64,000 nt of DNA from Lytechinus pictus. Its lineage: Eukaryota. Positions 2,627-22,849 of the stretch are shown here, in pieces (position 1 is the stretch's first letter; each line of letters starts with the position of its first letter). The DNA lies in NCBI RefSeq assembly GCF_037042905.1, contig NC_087258.1, positions 7,378,001 to 7,442,000 of the forward strand, given 5' to 3'. Below the pieces are notes generated by a model. It saw nothing but the letters and a program-made list of their open reading frames with translations, was not told the origin of the DNA and made no database searches. The position numbers were made by a program, and so were the translations under genes.

Positions 2627-2758
2627 NNNNNNNNNNNNNNNNNNNNNNNNNNNNNNNNNNNNNNNNNNNNNNNNNNNNNNNNNNNNNNNNNNNNNNNNNN
2701 NNNNNNNNNNNNNNNNNNNNNNNNNNNNNNNNNNNNNNNNNNNNNNNNNNNNNNNNNN
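2627..2758. other. assembly gap / masked run (132 N)
   Basis: run of n. Confidence 0.99.
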
Positions 2759-2765
2759 ACATATA

Positions 2766-3761
2766 CAGTGCGTATCAAAAAAAAGTTTACACTTTGAAAA
2801 ATCCCTGAGAACTAAAAAATATACAACATGTGGGTAATTATTTCACATATATTCTTGGGTATGGGTCTCATCTTTTCAATGAAAGTAAAATTTTTGACAG
2901 AATGTTACACTTGAGTGAGCACTGTCCATTTTTGTAAAGCTCGCGGAAATCTGTTTGCGCAGAAATGCTCGTTTTCACGCTGTGTCAAGGGGAAAACGCG
3001 AAATCAAACTTACCCTGCGAAACATTTCTCATACATTTCCCTTGCACTTTTAGTCAATTGAAATAAAACGGATACATTCAAGCATTTTGTAACAATTTTG
3101 CCACCCAAATTGAAATTTCAACACTTAGTAAGCACAACCTTTACCCTTTTCGTGCCAGCTGGATCTTAGGACATAACTGAATCTAAACAAGTGTTTATAT
3201 CAGACATCTCCAGCATTTTTTCACCAAGTTTTTATCATTTAAAGAGAGTTTACATTTCGTTTTTTATTTAATACTTGTTTTCTCCACATTTTTCCCAAGC
3301 TTGACAATAATTAACAAAATGAAAAATCAAGCCAAAGCCATTTCATGTAAATCACAACTCAGTGTAAAGCAAATATCGTCACGATGGCCTCGATGTGTGC
3401 GGGAGTAGGGTGGGTCGCAGTGCACTCTTCGAAGTGTTTTGGACAAACATGGCAAAGAACAAGTTAAAAAAGGTAAAAGATATCTTGAAATAAAATTTTC
3501 TAGCTAAATTCTATGTTTTCTTCATGATTTAGGTCTACTTTTATTCGCGTAACTATTTCAAAGTTCTGCGCAAATCATTTTCACTAACTTTTCAAAAGTA
3601 AGTGGTGCTCACTCAAGCGGAAATATTTTTCGACAGTTATATCGTCATTTGCTTGAGTGGATCTATACCAATCTTAAAATGTGGAAAAATCTTCAGGATA
3701 TTACAAATGTATAATTTTACAGGATTTTTTCTAAGTGTAAACTTTTTTTTGATACGCACTG
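2766..3761. mobile_element. non-autonomous Tc1/mariner-type DNA transposon (~1 kb)
   Basis: TIR CAGTGCGTATCAAAAAAAAGTTTACACTT / AAGTGTAAACTTTTTTTTGATACGCACTG with TA on both sides (2764-65, 3762-63); the inversion extends imperfectly (ttgagtgagcac / gtgctcactcaa; tttgcgcagaa / ttctgcgcaaa); no transposase ORF. Confidence 0.92.
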
Positions 3762-4195
3762 TATAACCACCTGTCTATGTATATCTACCCAAGGTTTCCC
3801 TCTTTCAGGGTATGTTTTTTCTCCTGTTTCTTCTCTCTCTCCCTCCCTCTTTCTCTCCCTCGTATATCTCTATCTCCCTTACTATCATCAGTAGCTTAAA
3901 ATTCATAATGATAATAAAAAAATGTCTTAGAATTTTCAGGGTCATGTTATCTCTTGGTCACGAATTTACAAAGTTTCGGAGATTTGCCTGCTATAGAAGC
4001 TTTACCAATTGCTCGTATAGTCATGCACAATTCCCGATTAAACTTCATGGAGCAGCTCGAAAATCTAACATTATTATTAATTTAGAGACATCTAAAGTAG
4101 ATGTGAACTTTACAGATACCCCTGCTCCCGATCTAGAGGCATCTGGCCCGCCGAACAACTCAATGCATGTCTTCATTCATTTATTTAGCTATAAT

Positions 4196-4398
4196 NNNNN
4201 NNNNNNNNNNNNNNNNNNNNNNNNNNNNNNNNNNNNNNNNNNNNNNNNNNNNNNNNNNNNNNNNNNNNNNNNNNNNNNNNNNNNNNNNNNNNNNNNNNNN
4301 NNNNNNNNNNNNNNNNNNNNNNNNNNNNNNNNNNNNNNNNNNNNNNNNNNNNNNNNNNNNNNNNNNNNNNNNNNNNNNNNNNNNNNNNNNNNNNNNNN
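4196..4398. other. assembly gap / masked run (203 N)
   Basis: run of n. Confidence 0.99.
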
Positions 4399-6255
4399 AC
4401 ATGCATATACACATTTATTAACTTATTCATTTTGGAATCATTACCATCATTTTAACTTAATTTATTTATCTATTATCATTTTTTTTTTGGGGGGGGGCGG
4501 GGCACCACCCTATCTCTACACATCCTTATTGTGTAAGGTCATGATACTGTCTAGAGAATATCTGATTTTTCAAACATAAAAAAAAAAATCCAAGGGGGTT
4601 GGGTAGTTTGAATTCTCCCCATACACTGACAGAACGCGAGGGATAAAGCATAAACAAGGGTGATAAACATTCAAACACCACTAATTTTTTGTTTCCGGTT
4701 TGGGAAATCTGAGGTATCAGACGCGTGTATTCATGGTATGTTTGAAAGGAGTTTAGAAAACTGAAGATTATGAGCTCACGTTGTATTTGTTGTGCTAATG
4801 TGGTTGCTGCTTCACGAAAAATTCTGAATTTCATAGAGCAACGGTAAGGTTTATTCCCTCCTGGCTTATGGCAAGAAATCTCCGCACTAGTCCTATATCG
4901 ATCGCTCAGAAATGGTACAAACTCATTTCTAATGAACCTGCCTGTATTTAACAATAGACCGCAAATTGTCGTTTTTGATGCTTGCGGGCAAGATGAACTG
5001 CTAATTGCTCACAACTTTGAGATCTCATTTACCCTAAACATGAAACAAAATTTAGGACGTCCTATCAACCGGTGGCTACCTAGGTTTCAAGAGGGATTGA
5101 AAACCCGCAATTTGCAGTGCGATTTCTCACGTTATGGCTGAATATCATATGAATAAACGTACGAAAATGATATCAATATATTCCTTCAACTATGTTCATG
5201 ATTATGGATTATTGCTTTTAAGTTCACGCTACTATTAATCTGGGATAGTCTGTCCCCTTTCTTACATGAAGTAATAGACGCATAAACATCTTTCGCACCC
5301 GAACGTAAACAAAACATTGAAAAACATTATTTAACTCGCGATGATAAACCACGGATTACATGGTTTTCGATTGGCGATATTCTTTGAGTGTAATCAGGGC
5401 CTAAACATGACGTTTTAGATTGAGATGAGTCTTCATACACGGAAAGAGGTTAGTTAGAGAAAACATAACATATTAATTGTATCATACGAATGTAGGCATA
5501 CCAGGTCTGGGAAAAGATAGCGGGAATTGTTTATCTGGAGCTCCGCGGAAATTAGTAATATTGCCGGTCCAACCGAGGATGAACAATTCCTATCATTTTT
5601 TTCTCGAGACAAACGCCTAGCATATTGTGTTTTATTCTTCAATTCTTCATGTCTGAATGATTGGTTTGGTTTGGTTTTATTTACCGTATAAAAATCACAA
5701 TAAAATACATTTCACAGGATATTAGTCAACATGCACATAAAAATGTACGGATGGATCACTCTATTCAGAGCCATTGATATAATGGCTATGTTCTTCCTAG
5801 AGGTCCAGTCAATAAACCTCAGTAATTTAGCACTAGTTGGTCCACATGCCCATTCTAGACCAAATTCATTGAGTCCCTTTGCTTAGCGGAATTTGATATT
5901 TGTCTCCGCCGTCACATCACAAGGGTTGCCCGGTAGATACAACTGGCTTCTCGGCGTAATCGAGACTCAGCGAAGTTTCGAATATTTGTCACTATTTTAC
6001 CTGTGTAGAAATTCGCATGCTCAATTCTAGCACAGATTTTCCCCGAGAATTTTTTTTATATTTTATTACTTTGACCAATCGTGTATATAGAATGCTCGTG
6101 AATATACATAAAAGTGATATCAATTCTATCACATGAATCATTGTTATTCATATTATACCACCCATACAAACGTATTGTCCGATATCTACTTTTCTTATAC
6201 ATTGGAAGAACATGTTTACCGATTTTCCTTCTGTGTTGTGACTGCAGCCAGACTA

Positions 6256-6492
6256 CACTCTAAAAATATAGGGTAAAAGTGCTCCATGAGAAATATGTGT
6301 CTAACCAACATTGGGCATTTCTTTTGGGCATTTTTATCTATTTTGCCCATTTTAAAGTTATTGCTGCTTATTTTTTTTAACCTTACTGGACAATATGCTT
6401 CCCGCATTGGGTAAAATACTGCCCCAAATTGGATGGACACAGTCATTATTACCCTCGTGCTGGTTACAATTTTATCCAATATTTTTACAGTG
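6256..6492. mobile_element. TA-flanked MITE (CACT.TAAAAA termini)
   Basis: ta|CACTCTAAAAATATAGGGTAAA ... TTTATCCAATATTTTTACAGTG|ta. Confidence 0.8.
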
Positions 6493-7378
6493 TACATGGA
6501 TCAGGAATGACCTATATTACCCGGCACCATAATAATCAAAATGTCTCTTTTCAGAGAGCCTTTGTGATTCGAATGACCCCTTTAAATTTACGAGGGATAA
6601 CCAGGCCATGCATTTCAGCCTCTGAAGGAGTTGGTCACTTATTAACGTCAAGCCGAGACGCGGTAGGTAAATATTTCTTCTCATTAAACCCCAAACATTA
6701 AGGAAACAAGGTGGGTAAATATCACTCGGCAGCTTGCTCCTTATTCCAGTCTCATGTGATCAATAACCAATTTGATATTGTTATTAAGACTGCGTCGATA
6801 TAAATGTCAGTAAACGGAGAATGTGGTCATGTAAAAGATTGAGGCGTTCCATAGTTTGGACGTCATGCGAAGAAATGACTTTGCTATGTTTGTGTATTAC
6901 TTTGTCTGAAATTGTCACGATTGAATTGTGTGACTGTGAATGTGTCCCCATACTATGCCTGTATATTTTATGAACATGTTATGATTCAATATCATAAAAA
7001 TGAAATAGTAGACGGCAAACGGTGTTACATCTCATATATTTTGATGGTGTAACGTAACTATGATTTTCCAGATTTTGCGTAAAAGGGGCCTTGTTCTACT
7101 TTATTCGAGAACATGATATGTAAGTGATTTCGAAAAAAAGATGTACTTTGGAATGCAAAGAGGGAAGTTATTAGAAAGGCCATTCTATACCCGCTTTTTT
7201 GAAAAAAAAAAAACCGGATGAAAGATGTCTGAAAATGTTCTTGAAACACTGCTCTATATCTATATAGGGATGAATTCTGGGTTGCGGAAACAGTACGGTC
7301 ACACAAACTGAAGGATGAGTTGTTATTTTCATGGTGTCCTGTAGACACGAAAAAAAAGAAAAAAAATTAGAGAAAATT

Positions 7379-12273: not shown

Positions 12274-12584
12274 TTTTTATTTTTTACGGCTCGATGCCTC
12301 CAATCATGCTTCTAACAATCAATCCGGGCAATCAATGACAAGTAACACAGTGAGCCACTGCAGTTTTTTCGCCCTTTTTTCGCCGTTTTGTGTGTTATAA
12401 CCTATGGGAAATTCAAAGTTGCAGTTTTTTCGCCGTTTTGAAAACGGCTAGAAAAGGGCGAAGAAAGGGAGAATTTTTGGAGAAAAAACGGCCAAAAAAC
12501 GGCTACATTAGGTTTCCTATGTAAACCTTGAATTATTATGGAGTGCCATCATTGTTCAATATAAGCGGAGCTATTGATTTCCCC

Positions 12585-13125
12585 ATGAAAACGGCGAGAA
12601 AACGGCGAATGTTAAGGACAAGGATCCTGTTAGAGGAGTGAAGATACTGAGAGAAAACGGCTAATAAACGGAGACAAAAGGGCGAGAAAATGGAGACAAA
12701 AGGGCGAATGGGTAGTAAGGCGTGTGTTGCATAAAACGGAGAGAAAAGGGCGAGAAAACGGAGAGAAAAGGGCGAATGGGTAGTAAGGCGTGCAGTGCAT
12801 AAACGGAGAGAAGAGGGTGAATGGGTCCCAAAGAGTGCATTGCAAGAAACGGAGAGAAAATGGCGGGAAAACAGAGAGAAAAGAAAAAAAAACAGAGAAA
12901 GGGCAGATGAGTAGTAAGAGGTGAGAGCATGAAACAAAGAAAAACAAAGGTTAGAAAAAAAAAGGGCTAATGGGTAGTATGAAGTGCATTGCATAAATGG
13001 GAGAAAAGGGGCGAGAAAACTGAGACGAAATGGTGAATTAGTAAGAAGTGCATTGCATAAAATTGCTTTAAAATGTGAAAATGTGTGATATATGCATTGA
13101 GAAAAAGCGACTAAAAAACGTAGAA
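12585..13125 (+). repeat. left subterminal tandem array (~60-70-bp units, AAAACGGAGAGAAAAGGGCGAATGGGTAGTAAG...TGCAT)
   Basis: several progressively degenerating units. Confidence 0.85.
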
Positions 13126-13714
13126 TATATATTTGCAATATTTCTATAAACTTAAGATTTTCTTAAGAACTCCTTTTGGAAATAAGCTCTAGTTTTCATG
13201 GGTAATATTTAATAATAATTCTCATTTTCATTCATGTAAAAAAAAAATTGTTATTTTACTCTCGGGGGGGGGGGGGGAGGGGGGTTAGGCCTTCTTTCAT
13301 TAATCTTATTTACATATTGTATAGGCCTACTACATTCATTGTTTTATTTCAACATTTTTTATATTTCATGTGGACTTTGATAAAATGTCAATCAGATGAA
13401 AATAAAATTTAATTGAATTGGATTGACACTTCTTGAATACTTCATTCTTTACTCTTATTTTCTCTTCTTCATGGGCGGGAACCCGAGGGGGACGCGTCCC
13501 TCACTTTTTGGAAAGGGGGACATAATATCAAATCCCCCTCTTTGTGATCTTTTATGATGGAGAACAATAAATCATTCAAAGTCGAATGTAGTTAAAGAGC
13601 TTAAATTTGCCCTATTTACTAAAAAATGCAAAATTTCTAGCGCCGAATATTGGCACGCAGGTTGTCTGGGACATAATCTACAAAATTGTATCGTAATTTA
13701 TTTCATGCAACTCC

Positions 13715-14161
13715 CTTCAAACCTCAGAATGTTCTATGTTTCTATGGTATAAGAACTCTTTGTGTACATGAACAAAATTGCGATATCAGATCAATTTCTT
13801 ATGTCTTATATCGTTTTTTTGGCAATTTCTTATGTATTTCTTTGTTTTTTACATTTTGTGTTTCATTATTTTTTCAATTAAATTTGTTTGGGACTCTTTT
13901 GATATCATAAACAGCATTACATCTAGACCAGCAAAATAATCATACATTTATGTTTTTTGTTGAAAACACAATTTGCATTGACTTTGTACACGAAATCACA
14001 TTTTTGAGCAATTTTGGGTCTGACATGCACTTATATAATAACCGCATACACGGGTGACGCAAAACTGGTCTAAAAAGTTGCGCAAGACTTGAAAGTAAAA
14101 ATTTAGCGAGCGGCGAAAATATTGCACGAATCGTTGGGGGGGGGGGGCGGCCTAGATAGGG
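13715..14161. mobile_element. one end of a piggyBac-like non-autonomous element
   Basis: ends poly-G-ggcctagatAGGG|TTAA; the other end was not found, so the left boundary is approximate. Confidence 0.45.
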
Positions 14162-14191
14162 TTAATGGATTATTCTCTATTTACCAATGAC

Positions 14192-14309
14192 CAGTGGCGG
14201 ACCGTGACCCGGAGGAGACAAAGCATTGGAGGGGCACAGCATTGTTCACAAACAATACAGTGCCCCTCCCATGCTTTGTCTCCTCGATCCGGGTCACGGT
14301 CCGCCACTG
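14192..14309. mobile_element. 118-bp palindromic hAT-type MITE
   Basis: TIR CAGTGGCGGACCGTGACCCGGA; near-complete hairpin; perfect 8-bp TSD CCAATGAC (14184-91, 14310-17). Confidence 0.95.
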
Positions 14310-14416
14310 CCAATGACTTTTAAATGTATTACAAATTTAATTATGAACCAGTAAAATCCTTCGAATAAACTGGCGTAAAGGGATGGGGCACATCCAAGAA
14401 TCTGTATGGAAGTGGG

Positions 14417-14621
14417 CAGGGGCGGATCCAGGATTTTCCAAAAGGGAGGAGGGGGGAATCTTTCGGGGGAAAATTTTGACAAGCCAAAAAAAAAAGTCTT
14501 CAATTCTAAAGGGGGGGGGGCACATCTTGCTTTCAAATGGCATTTTTACTTTACAAATTTTAATTGTCCTTATCAAAAAAGGGGGCACGTGTCCCCTGTG
14601 CCCCCCATGGATTCGCGCATG
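14417..14621 (+). mobile_element. hAT-type MITE (CAGGGGCGGATCC family)
   Basis: CAGGGGCGGATCCA...TGGATTCGCGCATG; TSD gaagtggg/taagtggg (7/8); inverted copy at 62705-62945. Confidence 0.85.
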
Positions 14622-15042
14622 TAAGTGGGGATATTTTGTACAAATATATATAGCCATACCCTCGCAAGTTAAGTGTACGATGAGTTACTGATGACATTGA
14701 CCAAATCAATGTCGTTAATGAAACACAGAGGCAAATAAGGGCAGCAATATTAATTCCCACATACTTAATTTATTTCATCTGCTTATTATACTTAAAGGGA
14801 ACTGTAAATTACATCCTATAATAAATATTACATTTATGAATTTGGCTCAGAATTTTGAATGTTGCAACTTTCTCCAGTGGTTCTCTAAATTGCGTTTTTT
14901 GTCCTTTCATCTACGAACACACTGACCCCTCTTAAAAACTTCACCCCCGGTATGCACTTGCCTCCCACTTGGTATTTTGCCATTTATGTTAATTCAAATA
15001 CTCGCATGATAATATGCAGAAGGGCACTTTTCATGTTTCTGA

Positions 15043-15177
15043 TGCTGCAGTCACATTTCCCCTACCGCGGCGTACGGCGAGTAAAAAAAGCAACAGCCAT
15101 TTTATTAATGTGTAGGTGGTACAAAAAAGTCTTAACGGATGTTTTCGACCCGCCGTAAGGGAAATGTGACTGGGCCA
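15043..15177. mobile_element. degenerate MITE of the CAGTCACATTT family
   Basis: cagtcacatttccc ... gggaaatgtgactg; same family as 22683-22849. Confidence 0.75.
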
Positions 15178-18100
15178 TTGGTCATTTAAGCAGTATCCAA
15201 CAAACCACTTTGATATACTTTGATTACTTGGGGGAGGCATACATCAGCCTCCATGATGTCATGAGCTGGTTCGATCTCTTTGGTGTATTGGTCAAAACTG
15301 TGTTTTATAGTGCTAAAGACCCCAATGCACTTGAGCTCCTTTGTTTTATTTAGGAAAGATAACTCTTAAAATGTATAAAAGAAGCTTTGGAGTGAATGCC
15401 CTAGCTGTCGCGACTTGAATGGGGTCAATTAATTACACCGTCTCGCACCTTTTGTGAACAATGGATGAAGGTGTGAAAATAGCAGTTAACACTTAACAAT
15501 AGGAAGAATCTGTTTCAACTTAAAGTTATGCAATGATCTCTTGAGATCTCTTGTTGTGTTTCTTCAACCCGGATGAATCCCCCAAACCACATTGTCCAAT
15601 CCCTGACCTACTTCAATAGTCAGCGTTTGTGAAAATGGAATGATAATCGAGGATGATAGTGTATTTGTGATGTAAATAATGATGTTGTTGATAATGAAGG
15701 GGGATGAAGAGGAAGAAGAGGACGAGAATGATGGTGGTGGTAATGATTTTGATGCGGTGATGATGGCGATAACATAATTATTTCTTTTCTTAATAAACAT
15801 ATTATATGTGTAAATTTATTTTTTTTTAAAGAAATTTTCTTTGTAAGAATGTGGATAAGATGCATATTATTTTATATTATCTTTGTTTTTTTTCTGATAT
15901 TTTTGTTTGATTTGTCTCTATTGTTCTGATTACAATATGCATGTATATATATCGTGATTTCGTTAATACCTTTGTTAATTCAATAAAACACATAAATTAT
16001 ATATGATACAGTGATTATACAATGAGCGTTATGGTTAACGATTTTGCACAAGCTGGTTATCAAAATGACGCTAGACGATTTTGGTAATAAGACCCACATG
16101 GATTTAGACGAATTGGCATAACATGTACAATGAATCAATTGTAGCTAACTCAATAAAGTATCCAAGCACATAGGGCTTAATGTGACATATGGAAAGTACT
16201 CAATAGATCTTTCATTAGAAAAACAAAATCGAGAAAAGATCCCTGTCGTGAGGTAATAGCTTTACTCAAGTGATTGTCACGTAGACCTCTATATATAACT
16301 ATAATGTATTTTATTTGTTTTGAACCATCTCTAATCATTGCTTTGGTTTTTAATCAATTATTTTTAATGTTTACAAGCTGTATACATTTTAATATGTTCG
16401 GTAATATGTTATTGAATAGCATATTCAATGAGTATTACGTCGTTATAATCATCATATTCTTTAAATATAGTGAAAAAAACTGTGAGCTTTATAACAATGC
16501 CAGTCACTTATTCGTTTTGTTGACGAAGGAATGTTTTGAAAGAAAAGTTGACCATGAGGCCGTTGTAAGTTCTTTTGCTTTCTTGGTCAAGCTTTGATCC
16601 GTAAGAAGATCTTTGTCAGGACTGTATGAATTAAAGCAATAAAGTATAATATTATCCTTCTATAATAATACAATAATAATATATGAATTAGAATAAGTAT
16701 GGCACGAGTAGAACAACAATTTCTCAAGTAAAACTTATATTATTAATGATAATGTCGATAAGAACAACGATTAAGACAAAATCATTAACTTTTATATGTA
16801 CTGATAAGTAATTGAAAGCCAGTATATATATAGGTTCCTCTCTAGCCATCTTTATGTAATGTGCTTTTGATTGCAGACGCTAATTGCCCCGGTAGTTGCG
16901 TGCATGTCTTCTCCAAGAGAGCTTGTACATATAGCTTACAGGTGACATGCACGCAACTGAACACTTAAACAAAGTAAGAGCAATTAAACAATACATGTAT
17001 ACCTGTTCCATTACTGAATTTTTAAGTTAACAGAATTTTTGAGGAGACAATTTCCCAACTCCTTTATGCAGCATCTAAGTTCCCTTACATTAGTAACCAT
17101 GTATTTAATTCCTTGATCATGGTCATATGATAAAACTCAAGCATCGCTTAATCTTCAAGGCTTCTAAAAAAAAAAAAATACTTGACGAATCAATGACAAT
17201 TTACTTGTTACAAACATGTATCAATCGGCGCCTTATTGGCTTCATGAAGAGTGCCGATGTAGCTGATGTGATATTTATTGATAAATAGATTATCTAACGA
17301 ACATATCATTACAGCATCTAAGTTTTCAAATGGTATGAAATGCTACGGGTGTCTTCTCGTTTACATCAAACGTTAAGATAAAAAAGTCTTAATGTTTGCT
17401 CGCTCACAACTTTAAAAAAAAAAAAATTGCCCGATATGCCATATATAGCCCCTTCAAAATCTTTGGCTCATTACGCCACTGATATGTTTCGTCACACTTC
17501 TATGCAAATGCTAATATACTAAACGTTGTGAGCGAGGAAGCCTTAAAAATTTTTTGATATTTTCATTTTAAAAAGATCAAATTTTGTAAAGTAGATTTTG
17601 ACATAAAAGTATTTAGAAAATGATATATTTCACCTTTCTCTCTTTTCTTTCCTTTTCTTTCCTTTTTTTAGTCGTCATTTTAAGGGGAAGCGCCCCAAGT
17701 CCCCCGTCCCCCATATGTGCACTTCTACCAATAGCATTATGTTGTTGTTATTATTTGATGAATAATTTTCGTAGAAACGACTGGCTCAGAAAACTATTAA
17801 ACACAGCCTTTCGTGAAAAGCTCCCCCAGTTGTCCCAAGAACGTGTGTTTATTTGGTTCCCCTCCCTCAACCCACCCTTTCGAGAAAAGCTATCCTGGTT
17901 TTCTCGAAAGGGTGCGGCCATCCCCGCTCCGAAAAAGCAAATGATTGTAACAAGCCCAAGAAGATATAGAAAAAAATACAGTACAGTAAAGTATACTGCA
18001 TACATTTTGCACTTTGCAACATCTTTCCAAAAGAAAATTGATGAAAAAAAAATCATATTTATTAAGTATTTATTTTCTAAAGATAACAAACAAATGGTGA

Positions 18101-18499
18101 AAATTAGTTAATTACAGATTTTTGTTAATTCTCTTATGACAGCAGAAAACACATGTTTGGTATCAAACCACAAGTGACAAATCATTTCACATGCGAAGAG
18201 GGGCGCAATCGGAAGCTGAGAAGTTTTTTTTTTCAGATATAGGCCGATTGATTTCAGCCATTTTAAAATCTTAATATTTAGTAGGTATTTGTCATTACTT
18301 TATGGTGGAAGTTTGATGAATTTTAAGAAAGGTTTGATATGATTGAAAAAATGAAGATTGTTCGGTATATTCACCACCATACATTGCCGTACATGTTATT
18401 CCAAGTTGTCACAATTGTACACTCACCCGCTTGTGTGGTACAACATTATTTGCTGATTTGTACTTGTTTAGTCTTATTTATTATTACTTTTGTGCCTTT

Positions 18500-18725
18500 T
18501 GCCATTTGTTAGCCGTTTCCGCAAGGGAGATATTCGCCCTTTATTACCCATTTTGTAGCTGTTTCCCACAAGGGAGGTACATGTATTCGCCCTTTATTAG
18601 CCGTTTTGTAGCCGTTTTCCACAAGGAAGGTATTCGCCATTTATTAGCCGTTTTGTAGCCGTTTTCCACGAGGGAAGTACTCGCCCTTTATTCGCCGTTT
18701 TGTAGCCGTTTTCCCGAATGGAGGT
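18500..18725 (-). repeat. right subterminal tandem array (~45-55-bp units, TATTCGCCCTTTATTAGCCGTTTTGTAGCCGTTTTCC)
   Basis: 4-5 units; the reverse complement shares AAAACGG and AAAGGGCGAAT with the left array. Confidence 0.85.
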
Positions 18726-19079
18726 ATTAATTCGCTATTTTATTCTGATGAAAATCATTGTTGCATACAGTTAGCTTTCCATAGTTGGTACACTTTTTTT
18801 GTCGCCGTTTTTTAGCCGTTTTCTAGCCCTTTTCTAGCCGTTTCCTGTGGGGAAAAAGGGAGAAAAAAGGGAGAAAAAACGGCGAAAAAACGGCGAATCG
18901 CCCAAACCAGTCTGGCTCACTGTGTAATATCTTCTCATGCATTTTAGTGATTATCTCAACAACATAAGTCTTACATGCCGGAGTGGGCACCAAGAATTAA
19001 TGATACTCGTAGGACTGGATAGCTTTATCCTTGGGCTTTGTTGTCGCGTGTTAGGTCAGTGGGTTTATTTTGATTTTTT

Positions 19080-19481
19080 TACAATGCGACATTCAGCACG
19101 GAGATTAGTTAAGTGCACGAAAAGTGTGGGCGAGTGGATGGGAGTGAGAGTGTGTGTATGTCACATCGCACGCACGTCCGCATTGCGAGTGACGTTGTGT
19201 TTTCATCGCTCTACCGCCACACGCATTTACTATCACTTTTGAATGTCGTCTGCAAACATCCGAACGCCACACTCTGCTCGATTTGCGTTCCTGCATTGCC
19301 TCTGACTTGTTACTGTCTCATCGTAATTACTAGACAGACACAACCGCTAAGCGAGGGGCATCCAGAAGGGGGTGTTTCGTTGAGAGATGCAGACACCACA
19401 TACAGTTTTTCAAGCCAACTATGCATGCATGGAATAATGATCAGTGACTGAGCTTTGGATTCTTACACACGGCTATCCAAT
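19080..19481 (+). promoter_or_regulatory. probable core promoter / 5' UTR of the signal-peptide gene
   Basis: unique, relatively CpG- and GT-rich sequence directly upstream of the candidate exon; inferred from position only. Confidence 0.4.
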
Positions 19482-19659
19482 ATGGAATTAATGCCTGCCA
19501 ACATTCGTGGGGAGATATGCCGCTGCGATGCCGGGCCATCGCCGTCATTCACGCCCGGGGTTCAGGGACGTTGTGATTGTCGCTTGCCGATGGGTTTACA
19601 TTTAATGTTTTGGTGCTTTGTTGCTGTGCTATGTGGAACACTTCAGCTGTCATCTGGTG
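19482..19659 (+). CDS. probable first coding exon of a secreted or type-I membrane protein (signal peptide); alternative start ATG 19590
   Basis: MELMPANIRG...CRLP-MGLHLMFWCFVAVLCGTLQLSSG: hydrophobic core followed by small residues, ending exactly at consensus donor G|GTGAGT (19660), phase 1; GC-richer than flanks. Confidence 0.65.
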
Positions 19660-20171
19660 GTGAGTTTAATAAACTACATGCTTCCATTATCAAGATAAAA
19701 ATAAGTCAGCTTAGCATACGAGTTATTTTTTGTTTCAATGATACCATTGCTTCCATGCCGAAGTCCCAGCTCGAACACAAGACGTTTATGAGCCGTGAGT
19801 AGTCCTATATTGGTTAACTTGGAAAAAATATTTATTAGTGTTTATATGGAAAATCTAACAATGTTTAAAGAGATCATGATTACTATGCATTCATGGAGAA
19901 AGGCATAGAGGAGTAGAGATATGTATACAGAGATATACAGATGGGATGACACATTACAATGAAGCTTTGTAAAATTAAAAAACAGATTGCTTTAAAGCAA
20001 AAGTGTTTAAAACAAAAGATAGAGATATATATACCGTATATCGATAATGTAGATAGAAAGAGGAGGGATAGAGGAGAAAGAAACAGCGAGCGAGAGAGAG
20101 CATGAAAGATGAATAGAATCGCCGAGAAAGCAATAAAAGTACATACAAAGAAATAAAACAGTGGTTATTGC

Positions 20172-20918
20172 CAGTGGCGTAGCTAGGATTTTTTTCCTGG
20201 GGGGGCACTGGGGGGTCCTTGCTTTTTCAGGGGGGGCACAATTTTTCCGGTGTGTGTGTGTATGTGTCACAAGGGCGGATCCGACTATCGCCAATAGGGG
20301 ACGGGGCCCGAAATTATCTTCACCTATATTTTCTCCGATCAGTCACTTCTTAGTTTTATTCTTATAAAACAACATAAACATGAAATAATGTCATAAGCCT
20401 TATAAAAAGTGCGAGCGCGAAGCGCGAGCGATTTTTCTTTACTTTCATGTATTTTGTCCTGAAAATTTAATATTCTGGGCAATGTTATGTATGATCCTGA
20501 ACAAGATTCGTATGTAACTAGATGATAACTGCGAACGCCAAGCGAGAGCAGAAATTTATATTAACTGTTCTAGCATTATCGAAAAGGGACCTGTTAAGGA
20601 CTGCTTACAGTTACCCATGAAGACGGTATATATTTCAATAATGGGAGCGCGAAGCGCGAGCAAAAAATGTATATAGTAACATATAAGATTTTTTTTTGCA
20701 AGTCTTCCCCTCACATTACATTATTTCATTCACTCCTCTTCCTCCTCTTATTTTCCTTTTCTTTTCGTTCTCCTTCTTTTCCGTTTTTCTTTTCTTCTTT
20801 CTCCCTTGTTTTCTTTTTTTTTTGCTCTGCCAATTTTTTCAGGGGGGCACCTGGGGGGGCACACCAAATCTCAGGGGGGCACGTGCCCCCCAGGCCCCCC
20901 CCCGTAGCTACGCCAATG
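20172..20918. mobile_element. 747-bp non-autonomous hAT-type element
   Basis: TIR CAGTGGCGTAGCTA / TAGCTACGCCAATG; perfect 8-bp TSD GTTATTGC (20164-71, 20919-26); three GCGAGCGCGAAGCGCGAGC-like motifs inside. Confidence 0.93.
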
Positions 20919-21756
20919 GTTATTGCATGTGCATGATTTCACTCACCCAATCAAATCCAGTAAATACGACACGCGCCATTTAGTCACGTTGCCGATTTTA
21001 CTGGAAAAGCCAGCATGAACATGTCAACACATTACACAACACATTCAAATCTAATATCCTTTTCATAAAAAACATTAATAGATTCCTAACCATTTTTTTC
21101 CAAATAATGTCTGTGTGTTCGCAGAATAACGGTTATAGCAGGCCTATCCAACACTAACGAAAAGTGGCACTTCTGAAATAACATAGAAATCACAAAGTTC
21201 AATGCCACCCGACAATCATCGGTCCATTCGTAGTAGTTTTGTAGCGAGTGTGAAAAAATCCACTTCCAGCCATTGTGTGTATGACGATGAAGACAAAAGA
21301 TCAATACACTCTTTACAAATTCGAACAATGCATAACGGCGCCTCGATTTTCGTTTATTAATTTGCACAAGTAGGACAGATGGAAAACTTTAAATGAAACT
21401 TATAGCCTGTCCACTACTAGTATTGTCAAGATTGGGGATGAAGGATTGAGGGACCATGTCCCCCAAACGTCCCATGACTAAGAAAAAATTAAGAGGAAAA
21501 TACAGAAAGAAATGGAAAAGAAATGTTAGATTTGATGCTATTTTCTGAATACATTATTCACAATCTATCACAAATGAGATTTGTTATTTTTAAAAGGTGA
21601 AACATCAGTCCCCCGAGGAGGATGGCTACCACCCGTCTTATTAAGAGCTGAAATTTTTTTAGAACAAATGTAAGAATATAGGAGAACGATAAAAAGATGA
21701 GTATGGATTAGTGATTGCTTGGTAGGGCATCTTTACAATAAATATGTTCTGTTTAA

Positions 21757-22390
21757 AGGACAAGTCCACCCCAACAAAAAGTTGATTTGAATAAAAAGAG
21801 AAAAATCCAACAAGCATAACACTGAAAATTTCATCAAAATCGGATGTAAAATAGGAAAGTTATGACATTTTAAAGTTTCGCTTAATTTTACAAAATAGTT
21901 ATGCTCATCCTGGTCGGTATGCAAATGAGGAGACTGATGACGTCATCCACTTACTATTTCTTTTGTAGTTTCACCTGACAATGAGAAGAAAATTACAATA
22001 TTTCATATAATATATGAAATATTGTAATTTTCTTCTCATTGTCAAGTGAAACAGCGATTATTTCCTATCTGAACATGTGCTATTACCATTGCTTTAACAT
22101 TATATGGTTCAGTCAAGTTGGCCCTCATTGTCAAATCTGTAAAAAATGAAAAAAAAAAGTATAATTCAAACAATAAACAGAAGAAACAGTGATTGAGGGA
22201 CATCATCGACTGTCTCATTTGCATGTCACTGAGTCGTGCATGTCACTCTTTTGTGCAAAATAAGTGAAACTTTAAAATGTCATAGCTTTCTCATTTTACA
22301 TCCGATTTGATGAAAGTTTCAGCGTTTATATGCTAGTTTGATTTTTCTCCATTTATTCAAGTCAACATTTTTCTGGGGTGGACTTGACCT
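21757..22390. mobile_element. TTAA-flanked Kolobok-type MITE, copy 1
   Basis: ttaa|AGGACAAGTCCACCCCA ... TGGGGTGGACTTGACCT|ttaa; long imperfect inverted arms. Confidence 0.92.
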
Positions 22391-22525
22391 TTAATTATAA
22401 GACAATGAATCAAACTCTCATTTTGTTTATGTTGCCTTTTGTGCAAATAGCTTGCTTCTGTACCTGAAAGCTTATAGTTGTAGACTACAGTACGGTTTTT
22501 TTAAATAAAAAATATAACCATTTGG

Positions 22526-22630
22526 TTGTATGAGGAGAGACGTGGACAATAGGCAAGGGCATGGACAATAGAAAAACGTCTTTTGAAATGTGGATTTACA
22601 GACGGATGGTGGCATACCTTGGAAACAAAA
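22526..22630 (+). pseudogene. decayed fragment of an RTE-clade LINE reverse-transcriptase ORF
   Basis: with two frameshifts reads LY-GETWTIGKGMDNRKTSFEMWIYRRM-IPWKQK, matching the RTE motif LYG.ETWT...FEMWC.RR.L.I.W. Confidence 0.75.
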
Positions 22631-22682
22631 TGAGTATTTCACATGACGGGGTGAATTGCATTATAGTGGTGTGTATAGTTAA

Positions 22683-22849
22683 TACCTCAGTCACATTTGC
22701 TCTACGCCGCGGCGGTCATAAGGCGAGTCGAAAACAGCCGTTTTATCTATTTTTATTCAAACCAATATTATGTAGCTATTGCAATAAATGTTAAAACGGC
22801 TGTTTTCGACTCGCCGTACGGCCGCTGTAGAGAAAATGTGACTGAGGCA
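22683..22849. mobile_element. palindromic MITE with TAA flanks (PIF/Harbinger-type)
   Basis: taa|TACCTCAGTCACATTT ... AAATGTGACTGAGGCA|taa; internal ggcgagtcgaaaacagccgttttа arm inverted. Confidence 0.88.

What the first reader, a model, noticed from the sequence alone, without database searches (positions are those of the whole stretch)
12346..18924. 6.6-kb cargo-carrying element whose ends begin with CACAGTG, inserted next to a promoter
Seen: exact 12-bp TIR CACAGTGAGCCA, TAA on both sides, mirrored subterminal arrays, no transposase, and a ~5-kb interior that looks like ordinary host DNA (nested MITEs, microsatellites). Established: CACAGTG is the V(D)J RSS heptamer; Transib/RAG-like transposons (RAG-like genes occur in echinoderms) have CAC ends with 5-bp TSDs, whereas Chapaev3/CMC elements have CAC ends with 3-bp TSDs. 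The flanks here fit the latter. Inference: a non-autonomous Chapaev3/foldback-like family able to carry large host-like cargo. TAA may be a fixed target preference, so it is only weak proof of a single insertion event.
Basis: partly seen in the sequence, partly recalled or inferred. Interest (0 to 1): 0.7.

Follow-up and report, generated by a model that had tools for sequence, protein, structure and literature searches.

The report
Non-coding CACTA-type transposon near a promoter
This 6.6-kb stretch is one copy of a young family of about 45 copies of a non-coding cut-and-paste DNA transposon of the CACTA/Chapaev kind; its interior is the family's own sequence, not captured host DNA, so it is an ordinary new member of a known kind.

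Summary
Exact 12-bp inverted ends (CACAGTGAGCCA) sit at 12346-12357 and 18913-18924. TAA flanks both sides. The subterminal motif arrays are mirrored. No ORF has a Pfam match.

The genome holds 38 exact left ends and 41 right ends, in about 45 convergent pairs of 2.1-7.4 kb plus three longer ones. Of 19 complete copies, 18 have a perfect 3-bp target duplication of varying sequence and one has 4 bp. TAA here is therefore a true duplication, not a fixed target.

The "host-like cargo" reading fails. One copy matches the whole 6,579 bp at 98.6%, and three more at 94-97%. The two subfamily-specific interior segments I searched occur in essence only inside family copies. A high-copy 118-bp MITE nested in the element is also found elsewhere.

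A 3-bp duplication, a CAC start and several hundred bp of direct and inverted subterminal repeats fit EnSpm/CACTA, which in Repbase includes Chapaev. They do not fit Transib/RAG, which makes 5-bp duplications. No RAG1-like or Transposase_21 hit lies inside any copy.

The autonomous partner was not found.

A contig from a related species matches the right flank from 6 bp past the element and then continues with other sequence. RNA places a transcription start about 340-365 bp to the right.

The parts
12343..12345 (.). Left copy of the 3-bp target site duplication (TAA)
   Evidence: Same trinucleotide at 18925-18927. 18 of 19 family copies have a 3-bp duplication of varying sequence.
12346..12357 (+). 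Left terminal inverted repeat CACAGTGAGCCA
   Evidence: The 28-mer that starts here occurs 38 times in the genome, with 0 in the control.
12358..13060 (+). Left subterminal repeat region: 3 forward then 12 reverse copies of GSCSTTTT, with 11-, 22-, 45- and 68-bp tandem periods
   Evidence: Shared by all 20 copies compared.
13061..18504 (.). Non-coding interior that belongs to the family. Element blocks 1-1700, 2650-3475 and 5356-6579 are shared by most copies. Element 1700-2650 and 3475-5356 are specific to the 6.6-kb subfamily.
14192..14309 (.). Nested 118-bp palindromic MITE, present in all copies of the 6.6-kb subfamily
   Evidence: I6: 35-nt arms, 91% complementary. (4,029 candidates; matches on both strands).
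18505..18912 (+). Right subterminal repeat region: 47/100-bp tandem array, 9 forward then 2 reverse motif copies, mirroring the left end
18913..18924 (-). Right terminal inverted repeat CACAGTGAGCCA
   Evidence: The right-end 26-mer (up to 1 mismatch) occurs 41 times in the genome, with 0 in the control.
18925..18927 (.). Right copy of the target site duplication (TAA)
19264..19657 (+). First exon of a neighbouring expressed + strand gene. The start of transcription is at about 19264-19289, the ATG near 19484 and the splice donor near 19657. This exon is not part of the element.
   Evidence: RNA raw reads lie on one strand only, with depth 9.7 then 25.4 in these bins, 1.2 in the bin before and 0.5 in the bin after. 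Contigs of X1 and X2 span 19289-19659 with no differences. The ORF is shown.

Best explanation
The stretch is one copy of a young, non-coding, non-autonomous cut-and-paste DNA transposon family of about 45 copies. It is of the CMC type, that is EnSpm/CACTA including Chapaev.

Shown: 12-bp inverted ends; mirrored arrays of a short subterminal motif; 3-bp target duplications of varying sequence; a deletion and insertion series of 2.1-7.4 kb that shares the same ends; and an interior that is the family's own sequence.

Inferred: a DDE transposase supplied in trans recognises the CAC... ends. It, or an accessory DNA-binding protein like maize TNPA, binds the subterminal GCCGTTTT-type motifs. The element is excised and reinserted with a 3-bp staggered cut. 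The size series arose by internal deletion (for example interrupted gap repair) and by nested insertions.

This copy inserted into TAA about 350 bp upstream of the transcription start of a + strand gene, after the split from the related species whose contig lacks it there. The identity of its first seven bases with the V(D)J heptamer reflects the shared CAC-type end chemistry of these superfamilies. It does not indicate mobilisation by a RAG/Transib enzyme.
For: Ends and TAA. Copy number: 38 exact left 28-mers, 41 right 26-mers, and 123 exact 12-mers against 26 in the control, mostly in convergent pairs. Target duplications: 18 of 19 are 3 bp with varying sequence, and one is 4 bp. Subterminal motif: 26 copies in the two end regions, mirror-arranged, and none in the interior. 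Interior conserved over its full length: L009 98.6% over 6,579 bp; L011, L012 and L015 94-97%. The two interior segments searched are found in essence only within family copies. No coding capacity. Orthologous contig of organism B: homology starts at 18931 at contig position 1702, and the 1,701 bases before it do not lie on the element, although B has related element sequence elsewhere. Copies differ by 1.4-5% whereas the unique flank differs from B by about 6%, so the insertion is younger than the split. Definitions: CACTA has TIRs, several hundred nt of direct and inverted subterminal repeats and a 3-bp duplication (PMC8978399). Chapaev3 has a 3-bp duplication and CAC ends (PMC3014272). Repbase classifies non-autonomous elements by ends and duplication length and merges Chapaev into EnSpm (PMC4455052).
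Against: No transposase is linked to the family. The 12 Transposase_21 hits (8 with open frames of 657-914 aa) and the DUF4218 hits all lie outside family copies, and no exact family 12-mer lies near them. The ends read CACAG, not the canonical CACTA. The HMM scans are insensitive here: a CACTA transposase that earlier notes place on this contig was not hit. Absence of hits inside the unread 14.8-kb copy therefore proves nothing either way. The empty site in species B is shown from the right flank only.
Confidence: 0.8

Rival explanations
1. It is specifically a Chapaev3-group element. It would be moved by a Chapa-domain transposase that some authors place in the Transib superfamily, so the RSS-like heptamer would reflect real kinship with RAG/Transib ends.
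For: CAC ends and 3-bp duplications with a T/A bias: position 1 is T in 11 of 18, position 3 is A in 10 of 18, and TAA occurs 4 times. This is close to the TWA consensus reported for Chapaev3 (PMC3014272). Kapitonov and Koonin place Chapaev and Chapaev3 within the Transib superfamily (PMC4411706).
Against: Only 4 of 19 duplications fit TWA. The long, two-orientation subterminal repeat regions and multi-kb size are the CACTA hallmark (PMC8978399), whereas the described Chapaev3 families are short (0.3-1.9 kb in PMC3014272). No transposase was read. The genome is said by earlier notes to be rich in giant CACTA families.
Confidence: 0.2
2. It is a cargo-carrying (Pack-type, transduplicating) element that picked up about 5 kb of host DNA between family ends.
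For: The interior is non-coding, AT-rich and holds a nested MITE and simple repeats, so by eye it looks like intergenic DNA. One outside match exists, at C2:42314621, with 80% identity over 440 bp.
Against: The full interior recurs at 94-98.6% in other copies with different flanks and duplications. Segments 15850-17330 and 14045-14990 match in essence only inside family copies, apart from the MITE. The C2 match was not read and may be a degenerate copy.
Confidence: 0.04
3. It is a Transib/RAG-like non-autonomous element whose CACAGTG ends act as recombination-signal-like sites for a RAG1-like transposase.
For: The heptamer is exact at both ends. The genome has RAG1-like genes with open frames of 612-624 aa. 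According to earlier notes it also has Transib-type MITEs.
Against: Duplications are 3 bp in 18 of 19 copies and never 5 bp. The ends match for only 12 bp. Read directly from the sequence, the first subterminal motif starts at offsets 25 and 29, so there is no 12/23-like asymmetry and no A-rich nonamer. None of the 17 PF12940 hits lies in a family copy.
Confidence: 0.03
4. It is a PIF/Harbinger-type non-autonomous element, a superfamily that also makes 3-bp duplications.
For: 3-bp duplications with a T/A bias.
Against: The duplications are not restricted to TWA: ACA, TCA, AGA, TGT, GAA, GAT and TAC occur. From my own knowledge, not tested here, CAC... ends with long subterminal repeat arrays are not the Harbinger pattern. 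No Harbinger HMM scan was run.
Confidence: 0.04
5. The two ends are independent solo insertions that bracket ordinary DNA by chance.
Against: About 45 convergent left and right pairs with matching 3-bp duplications, and a shared interior.
Confidence: 0.01

Closest known systems
Non-autonomous EnSpm/CACTA elements (maize dSpm/I type, and EnSpm-N entries of Repbase)
   Same: CAC... inverted ends of about 12-13 bp. 3-bp target duplication. Several hundred bp of short subterminal motifs in direct and inverted orientation at both ends. A series of internally deleted, non-coding derivatives with identical ends.
   Different: The ends read CACAGTG..., not CACTA. No autonomous partner was identified here. 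The interior shows no recognisable remnant of transposase or accessory genes.
Chapaev3 non-autonomous families (for example Chapaev3-1N1/N2 of Anolis, PMC3014272)
   Same: Ends begin with CAC. 3-bp duplications with a preference for T/A.
   Different: This family is much longer (2.1-7.4 kb against 0.3-0.4 kb). Its long subterminal repeat regions are not mentioned for those families in the paper I searched. The TWA consensus is met by only 4 of 19 duplications. It is young, with about 96% pairwise identity, whereas the Anolis families are old and extinct.
Transib / RAG-like MITEs of sea urchins (Kapitonov and Jurka 2005, PMC1131882; earlier notes on this genome)
   Same: The terminal heptamer CACAGTG is identical to the V(D)J RSS heptamer.
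   Different: 3-bp, not 5-bp, duplications. 12-bp ends without nonamer-like blocks or 12/23 asymmetry. No link to RAG1-like genes.

Membership tests
EnSpm/CACTA (CMC) superfamily | 3-bp target site duplication | tested here: met
   18 of 19 complete copies have a perfect 3-bp duplication of varying sequence, and one has 4 bp.
EnSpm/CACTA (CMC) superfamily | Short terminal inverted repeats beginning CAC(TA) | tested here: inconclusive
   The 12-bp ends begin CACAG. The CAC is met, but the full CACTA is not.
EnSpm/CACTA (CMC) superfamily | [quoted passage not shown] | tested here: met
   26 motif copies in two orientations within 720 bp on the left and 430 bp on the right, and none in the interior. 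Definition from PMC8978399.
EnSpm/CACTA (CMC) superfamily | Mobilised by a CMC-type DDE transposase (Transposase_21 core) carried by an autonomous relative with the same ends | tested here: inconclusive
   The genome has 12 PF02992 hits, 8 with open frames of 657-914 aa. Some are followed by weak DUF4218 matches. None lies inside a family copy or near an exact family 12-mer. The 14.8-kb copy at C8:3570376-3585180 could not be read.
Chapaev3 group | 3-bp duplication of consensus TWA and ends beginning CAC | tested here: inconclusive
   Length and CAC are met. TWA holds in 4 of 19 copies, with only a T/A bias. Criterion from PMC3014272.
Chapaev3 group | Transposase with a Chapa zinc-finger domain | not testable with these tools
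   No partner sequence was available.
Transib / RAG-like | 5-bp target site duplication | tested here: not met
   No copy of 19 has a 5-bp duplication.
Transib / RAG-like | RSS-like ends: heptamer plus nonamer-like block, often with 12/23-like asymmetry | tested here: not met
   The heptamer is exact. The ends diverge after base 12. The first subterminal motif starts at offsets 25 (left) and 29 (right) and is T-rich, not an A-rich nonamer (read).
Transib / RAG-like | RAG1-core-like transposase associated with the family | tested here: not met
   17 PF12940 hits in the genome, none within any family pair.
Cargo-carrying (Pack-type, transduplicating) elements | The interior derives from a host locus that exists separately from the element | tested here: not met
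   The interior segments match in essence only inside family copies. The whole interior is shared among copies.
PIF/Harbinger | 3-bp TWA duplication and a DDE_Tnp_4 transposase plus a Myb-like gene | tested here: inconclusive
   The duplication length fits but the sequence is not restricted to TWA. No transposase scan was run for this family.

The most novel reading that the evidence does not exclude
The unread 14.8-kb copy (C8:3570376-3585180), which has a proper left end and a proper right end, is the autonomous master of this family. It would encode a Chapaev-like, Chapa-domain transposase that works on perfect RSS-heptamer ends while making 3-bp duplications. That would be a live intermediate between the CACTA/Chapaev and Transib/RAG end chemistries in an echinoderm.
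Probability: 0.08. Interest if true: 0.55.

Novelty: new member of a known kind. Interest (0 to 1): 0.22.

Why it matters
The finding corrects an attractive reading. The RSS-like heptamer and the "cargo" are not signs of a new cargo-carrying or RAG-related element. They belong to an ordinary non-autonomous CACTA/Chapaev-type family.

Three modest points of value remain:
- The family is young (whole copies 1.4-5% apart) and appears to be absent at this site in a related species, so it is a usable marker of recent DNA-transposon activity in this sea urchin.
- This copy sits about 350 bp upstream of an active transcription start and could affect that gene.
- The family gives a clean set of ends with which to look for the responsible transposase among the many CACTA-type elements of this genome.

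Tried and rejected
- **Long copies.** I tried to fetch the two long copies (C8 14.8 kb, C3 11.4 kb) and the loci of the Transposase_21 hits. I did not try to read letters by another route.
- **HMM scans of the own genome.** PF02992, PF13960 and PF12940 gave hits, but none inside a family copy. These scans look insensitive for this genome's CACTA transposases, so the blank is weak evidence.
- **Diverged relatives.** The pattern for relatives with CACAGTG, a base other than A at position 8, and the subterminal motif gave 0 hits.
- **Empty site.** The empty-site 30-mer, with 2 mismatches allowed, is absent from the own assembly.
- **10.8-kb copy.** L013 looked like a candidate master, but its extra 6 kb carries weak Phage_integrase and RVT_3 matches. 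It is a nested tyrosine-recombinase retroelement.
- **11.4-kb copy.** The C3 copy carries the 6.6-kb subfamily's segments, interrupted by at least one insertion of about 1.2 kb.
- **Scan for a transposase.** No transposase fragment appears among the longest ORFs (170 aa or more) of the window and the twenty 10-kb loci.
- **Caveat on identity.** The 100% identity of the left 100 bp among my copies is due to selection, because they were chosen as the best matches to that end. I do not use it as evidence.
Full report
**Observation**

The 12-mer CACAGTGAGCCA occurs exactly twice in the 64-kb window, at 12346-12357 on the + strand and at 18913-18924 on the - strand. Read inward, the two ends agree for exactly 12 bases and then diverge. 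TAA lies directly outside each end, and the fourth base out differs.

A short motif, GSCSTTTT and its complement, occurs 26 times in the element:
- In the left 720 bp there are 3 forward copies followed by 12 reverse copies.
- In the right 430 bp there are 9 forward copies followed by 2 reverse copies, the mirror image of the left.
- There are none in the 5.4-kb interior. The rest of the window has 0.07-0.14 per kb.

Tandem periods of 11, 22, 45-47, 68 and 100 bp fit these arrays.

The element has no ORF that looks real. The longest are translations of the repeat arrays, and ten interior ORFs have no Pfam match at E<=0.1. There are no tRNA genes or Rfam families between 11000 and 21500.

**It is a family**

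- The left 155 bp has at least 40 matches in the 811-Mb assembly, 24 of them identical.
- The exact left 28-mer occurs 38 times. The right 26-mer, with up to one mismatch, occurs 41 times. Reversed-pattern controls give 0.
- The exact 12-mer occurs 123 times against 26 for the control.
- In the part of that list that was shown, the matches fall into convergent pairs 2.1-7.4 kb apart, three longer pairs (10.8, 11.4 and 14.8 kb), and about 26 singles, which is the chance level.

**Target duplication**

I fetched 20 copies with their flanks. Eighteen have a right end within 10 kb, and their lengths are 4.2-7.4 kb.

With the window copy that makes 19 complete copies. Eighteen have a perfect 3-bp duplication, and its sequence varies: TTT, ACA, TCA, AGA, ATT, AAA, TGT, GAA, GAT, TAT, TAA, TAC, ATA. 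One copy has a 4-bp duplication, ATTA. None has 5 bp.

There is only a bias to T at the first position (11 of 18) and to A or T at the third. The TAA at this copy is thus a true duplication from one insertion event.

**The interior is not cargo**

- Copy L009 (C12) aligns to all 6,579 bp at 98.6%. L011, L012 and L015 align over nearly the whole length at 94-97%.
- The shorter copies share element blocks 1-1700, 2650-3475 and 5356-6579 and differ by deletions and replacements.
- I searched the genome with the two segments carried only by the 6.6-kb subfamily. Window 15850-17330 matches in essence only inside family copies, apart from one unread 80% match of 440 bp on C2 and two weak short ones.
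- Window 14045-14990 does the same, except for a 118-bp palindromic MITE at 14192-14309. That MITE has 4,029 first-look candidates genome-wide and is present in every copy of the subfamily, so it was there before the subfamily spread.
- No separate host donor locus exists.
- A diagnostic CG/TG difference in the right end separates the 6.6-kb subfamily (7 exact copies) from the rest.

**Classification**

[quoted passage not shown] Chapaev3 elements have a 3-bp TWA duplication and ends beginning CAC (PMC3014272). Repbase classifies non-autonomous elements by ends, duplication length and structure, and has merged Chapaev and Mirage into EnSpm (PMC4455052). Kapitonov and Koonin instead place Chapaev and Chapaev3 in the Transib superfamily (PMC4411706).

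This family meets the duplication length, the CAC start and the subterminal repeat architecture. It does not meet the Transib/RAG criteria:
- No copy has a 5-bp duplication.
- The ends match for only 12 bp.
- The first subterminal motif begins at offsets 25 and 29 from the two tips and is T-rich. There is no nonamer-like block and no 12/23 asymmetry (read).
- None of the 17 RAG1-core (PF12940) hits in the genome lies in a family copy.

I therefore file it under CMC (EnSpm/CACTA in the broad sense). Whether it belongs to the Chapaev3 group stays open.

**The autonomous partner was not found**

The genome has 12 Transposase_21 hits, eight with open frames of 657-914 aa. Several are followed by weak DUF4218 matches, which is the CACTA transposase layout. 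None lies inside a family copy, and no exact family 12-mer lies near them. A pattern search for diverged relatives with the same subterminal motif found nothing.

Of the three long copies:
- The 10.8-kb copy holds a nested tyrosine-recombinase retroelement.
- The 11.4-kb copy is a 6.6-kb-type copy with insertions.
- The 14.8-kb copy at C8:3570376-3585180 has a proper left end and a proper right end.

Earlier notes of this scan, which I did not check, say that this genome (named there as Lytechinus pictus) holds many young two-gene CACTA elements of 14-25 kb. One of them, on this contig, was not hit by my HMM scans. The blank inside the 14.8-kb copy is therefore weak evidence.

**Age and the empty site**

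Conserved blocks of the copies are about 96% identical pairwise. The left 100 bp is identical only because of how I chose the copies.

I laid four runs on window 16900-22800. A 3,400-bp DNA contig of a related species (organism B) matches 18931-19984 at its positions 1702-2748 and then matches 20917-21478. Homology therefore starts 6 bp beyond the element's end. The 1,701 bases before it do not lie on the element, although B has related element pieces on other contigs.

This fits an empty orthologous site. The left flank was outside the 6,000-letter limit, so the joined site itself was not seen. The unique flank differs from B by about 6%, more than the 1.4-5% between whole copies. That fits an insertion after the split. 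The empty-site 30-mer is absent from the own assembly.

**Promoter claim**

Stranded RNA raw reads (X21) cover 19264-19657 with the first mate on the - strand only. Depths are 9.7 and 25.4 in those two bins, 1.2 in the bin before and 0.5 after. Contigs of two other runs span 19289-19659 without a difference, while 19067-19263 is almost uncovered.

An ORF with an ATG near 19484 runs to a GT donor near 19657. The element's right end is therefore about 340-365 bp upstream of the transcription start of an expressed + strand gene. Whether it changes that gene's expression was not tested.

**Mechanism**

Shown: the ends, the motif arrays, the 3-bp duplications, the size series, the shared interior and the absence in a relative.

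Inferred from the CACTA model: a DDE transposase supplied in trans cuts at the CAC ends. Binding of the subterminal motifs, by it or by an accessory protein, brings the ends together. Reinsertion uses a 3-bp stagger. Internal deletions during repair generated the non-coding size series.

**Verdict**

This is a real, well-bounded, young non-autonomous DNA transposon of a known kind. The cargo reading and the RAG-related reading are not supported.

Noticed in passing
window 19985-20916: This stretch is replaced by about 99 bp in the orthologous contig of the related species. Its core (about 20050-21040) has very high contig depth in all runs. It looks like a second lineage-specific repeat insertion, lying in the first intron of the same gene.
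   Followed up: partly
window 21628-22415 and 22613-22800: Extremely high-copy repeat. Summed contig depth is 10^5-10^6, it is abundant in RNA reads on both strands, and it has many 'opposite strands' joints between about 21800 and 22360. This suggests a foldback or inverted-repeat element.
   Followed up: no
window 14192-14309: A 118-bp palindromic MITE (35-nt arms, 91% complementary) with 4,029 first-look candidates in the genome. It is nested in every copy of the 6.6-kb subfamily.
   Followed up: partly
L042:2600-8600 (C8:28305995-28316812 copy): A family copy of 10.8 kb carries a nested insert of about 6 kb. Its ORFs match Phage_integrase weakly, below Pfam's cut-off, and match RVT_3. It looks like a DIRS/Ngaro-type tyrosine-recombinase retroelement.
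   Followed up: partly
G000:C182:16498-18156, C233:18651-20309, C4:15674907-15676589: Three RAG1-core (PF12940) matches with uninterrupted frames of 612-624 aa (E 1e-65 to 1e-72), plus 14 broken or partial ones. The first two have identical scores on small contigs and may be one locus assembled twice.
   Followed up: no
G000:C8:3570376-3585180: A 14.8-kb family copy with an exact left 28-mer and a right-type end. It is unread and is the best candidate for an autonomous master, or else another nested insertion.
   Followed up: partly
G000:C4:18633367-18635503, C8:2996583-2998772, C10:16708818-16710970, C12:16490712-16492899: Four family copies of 2.14-2.19 kb form a short deletion subfamily.
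   Followed up: no
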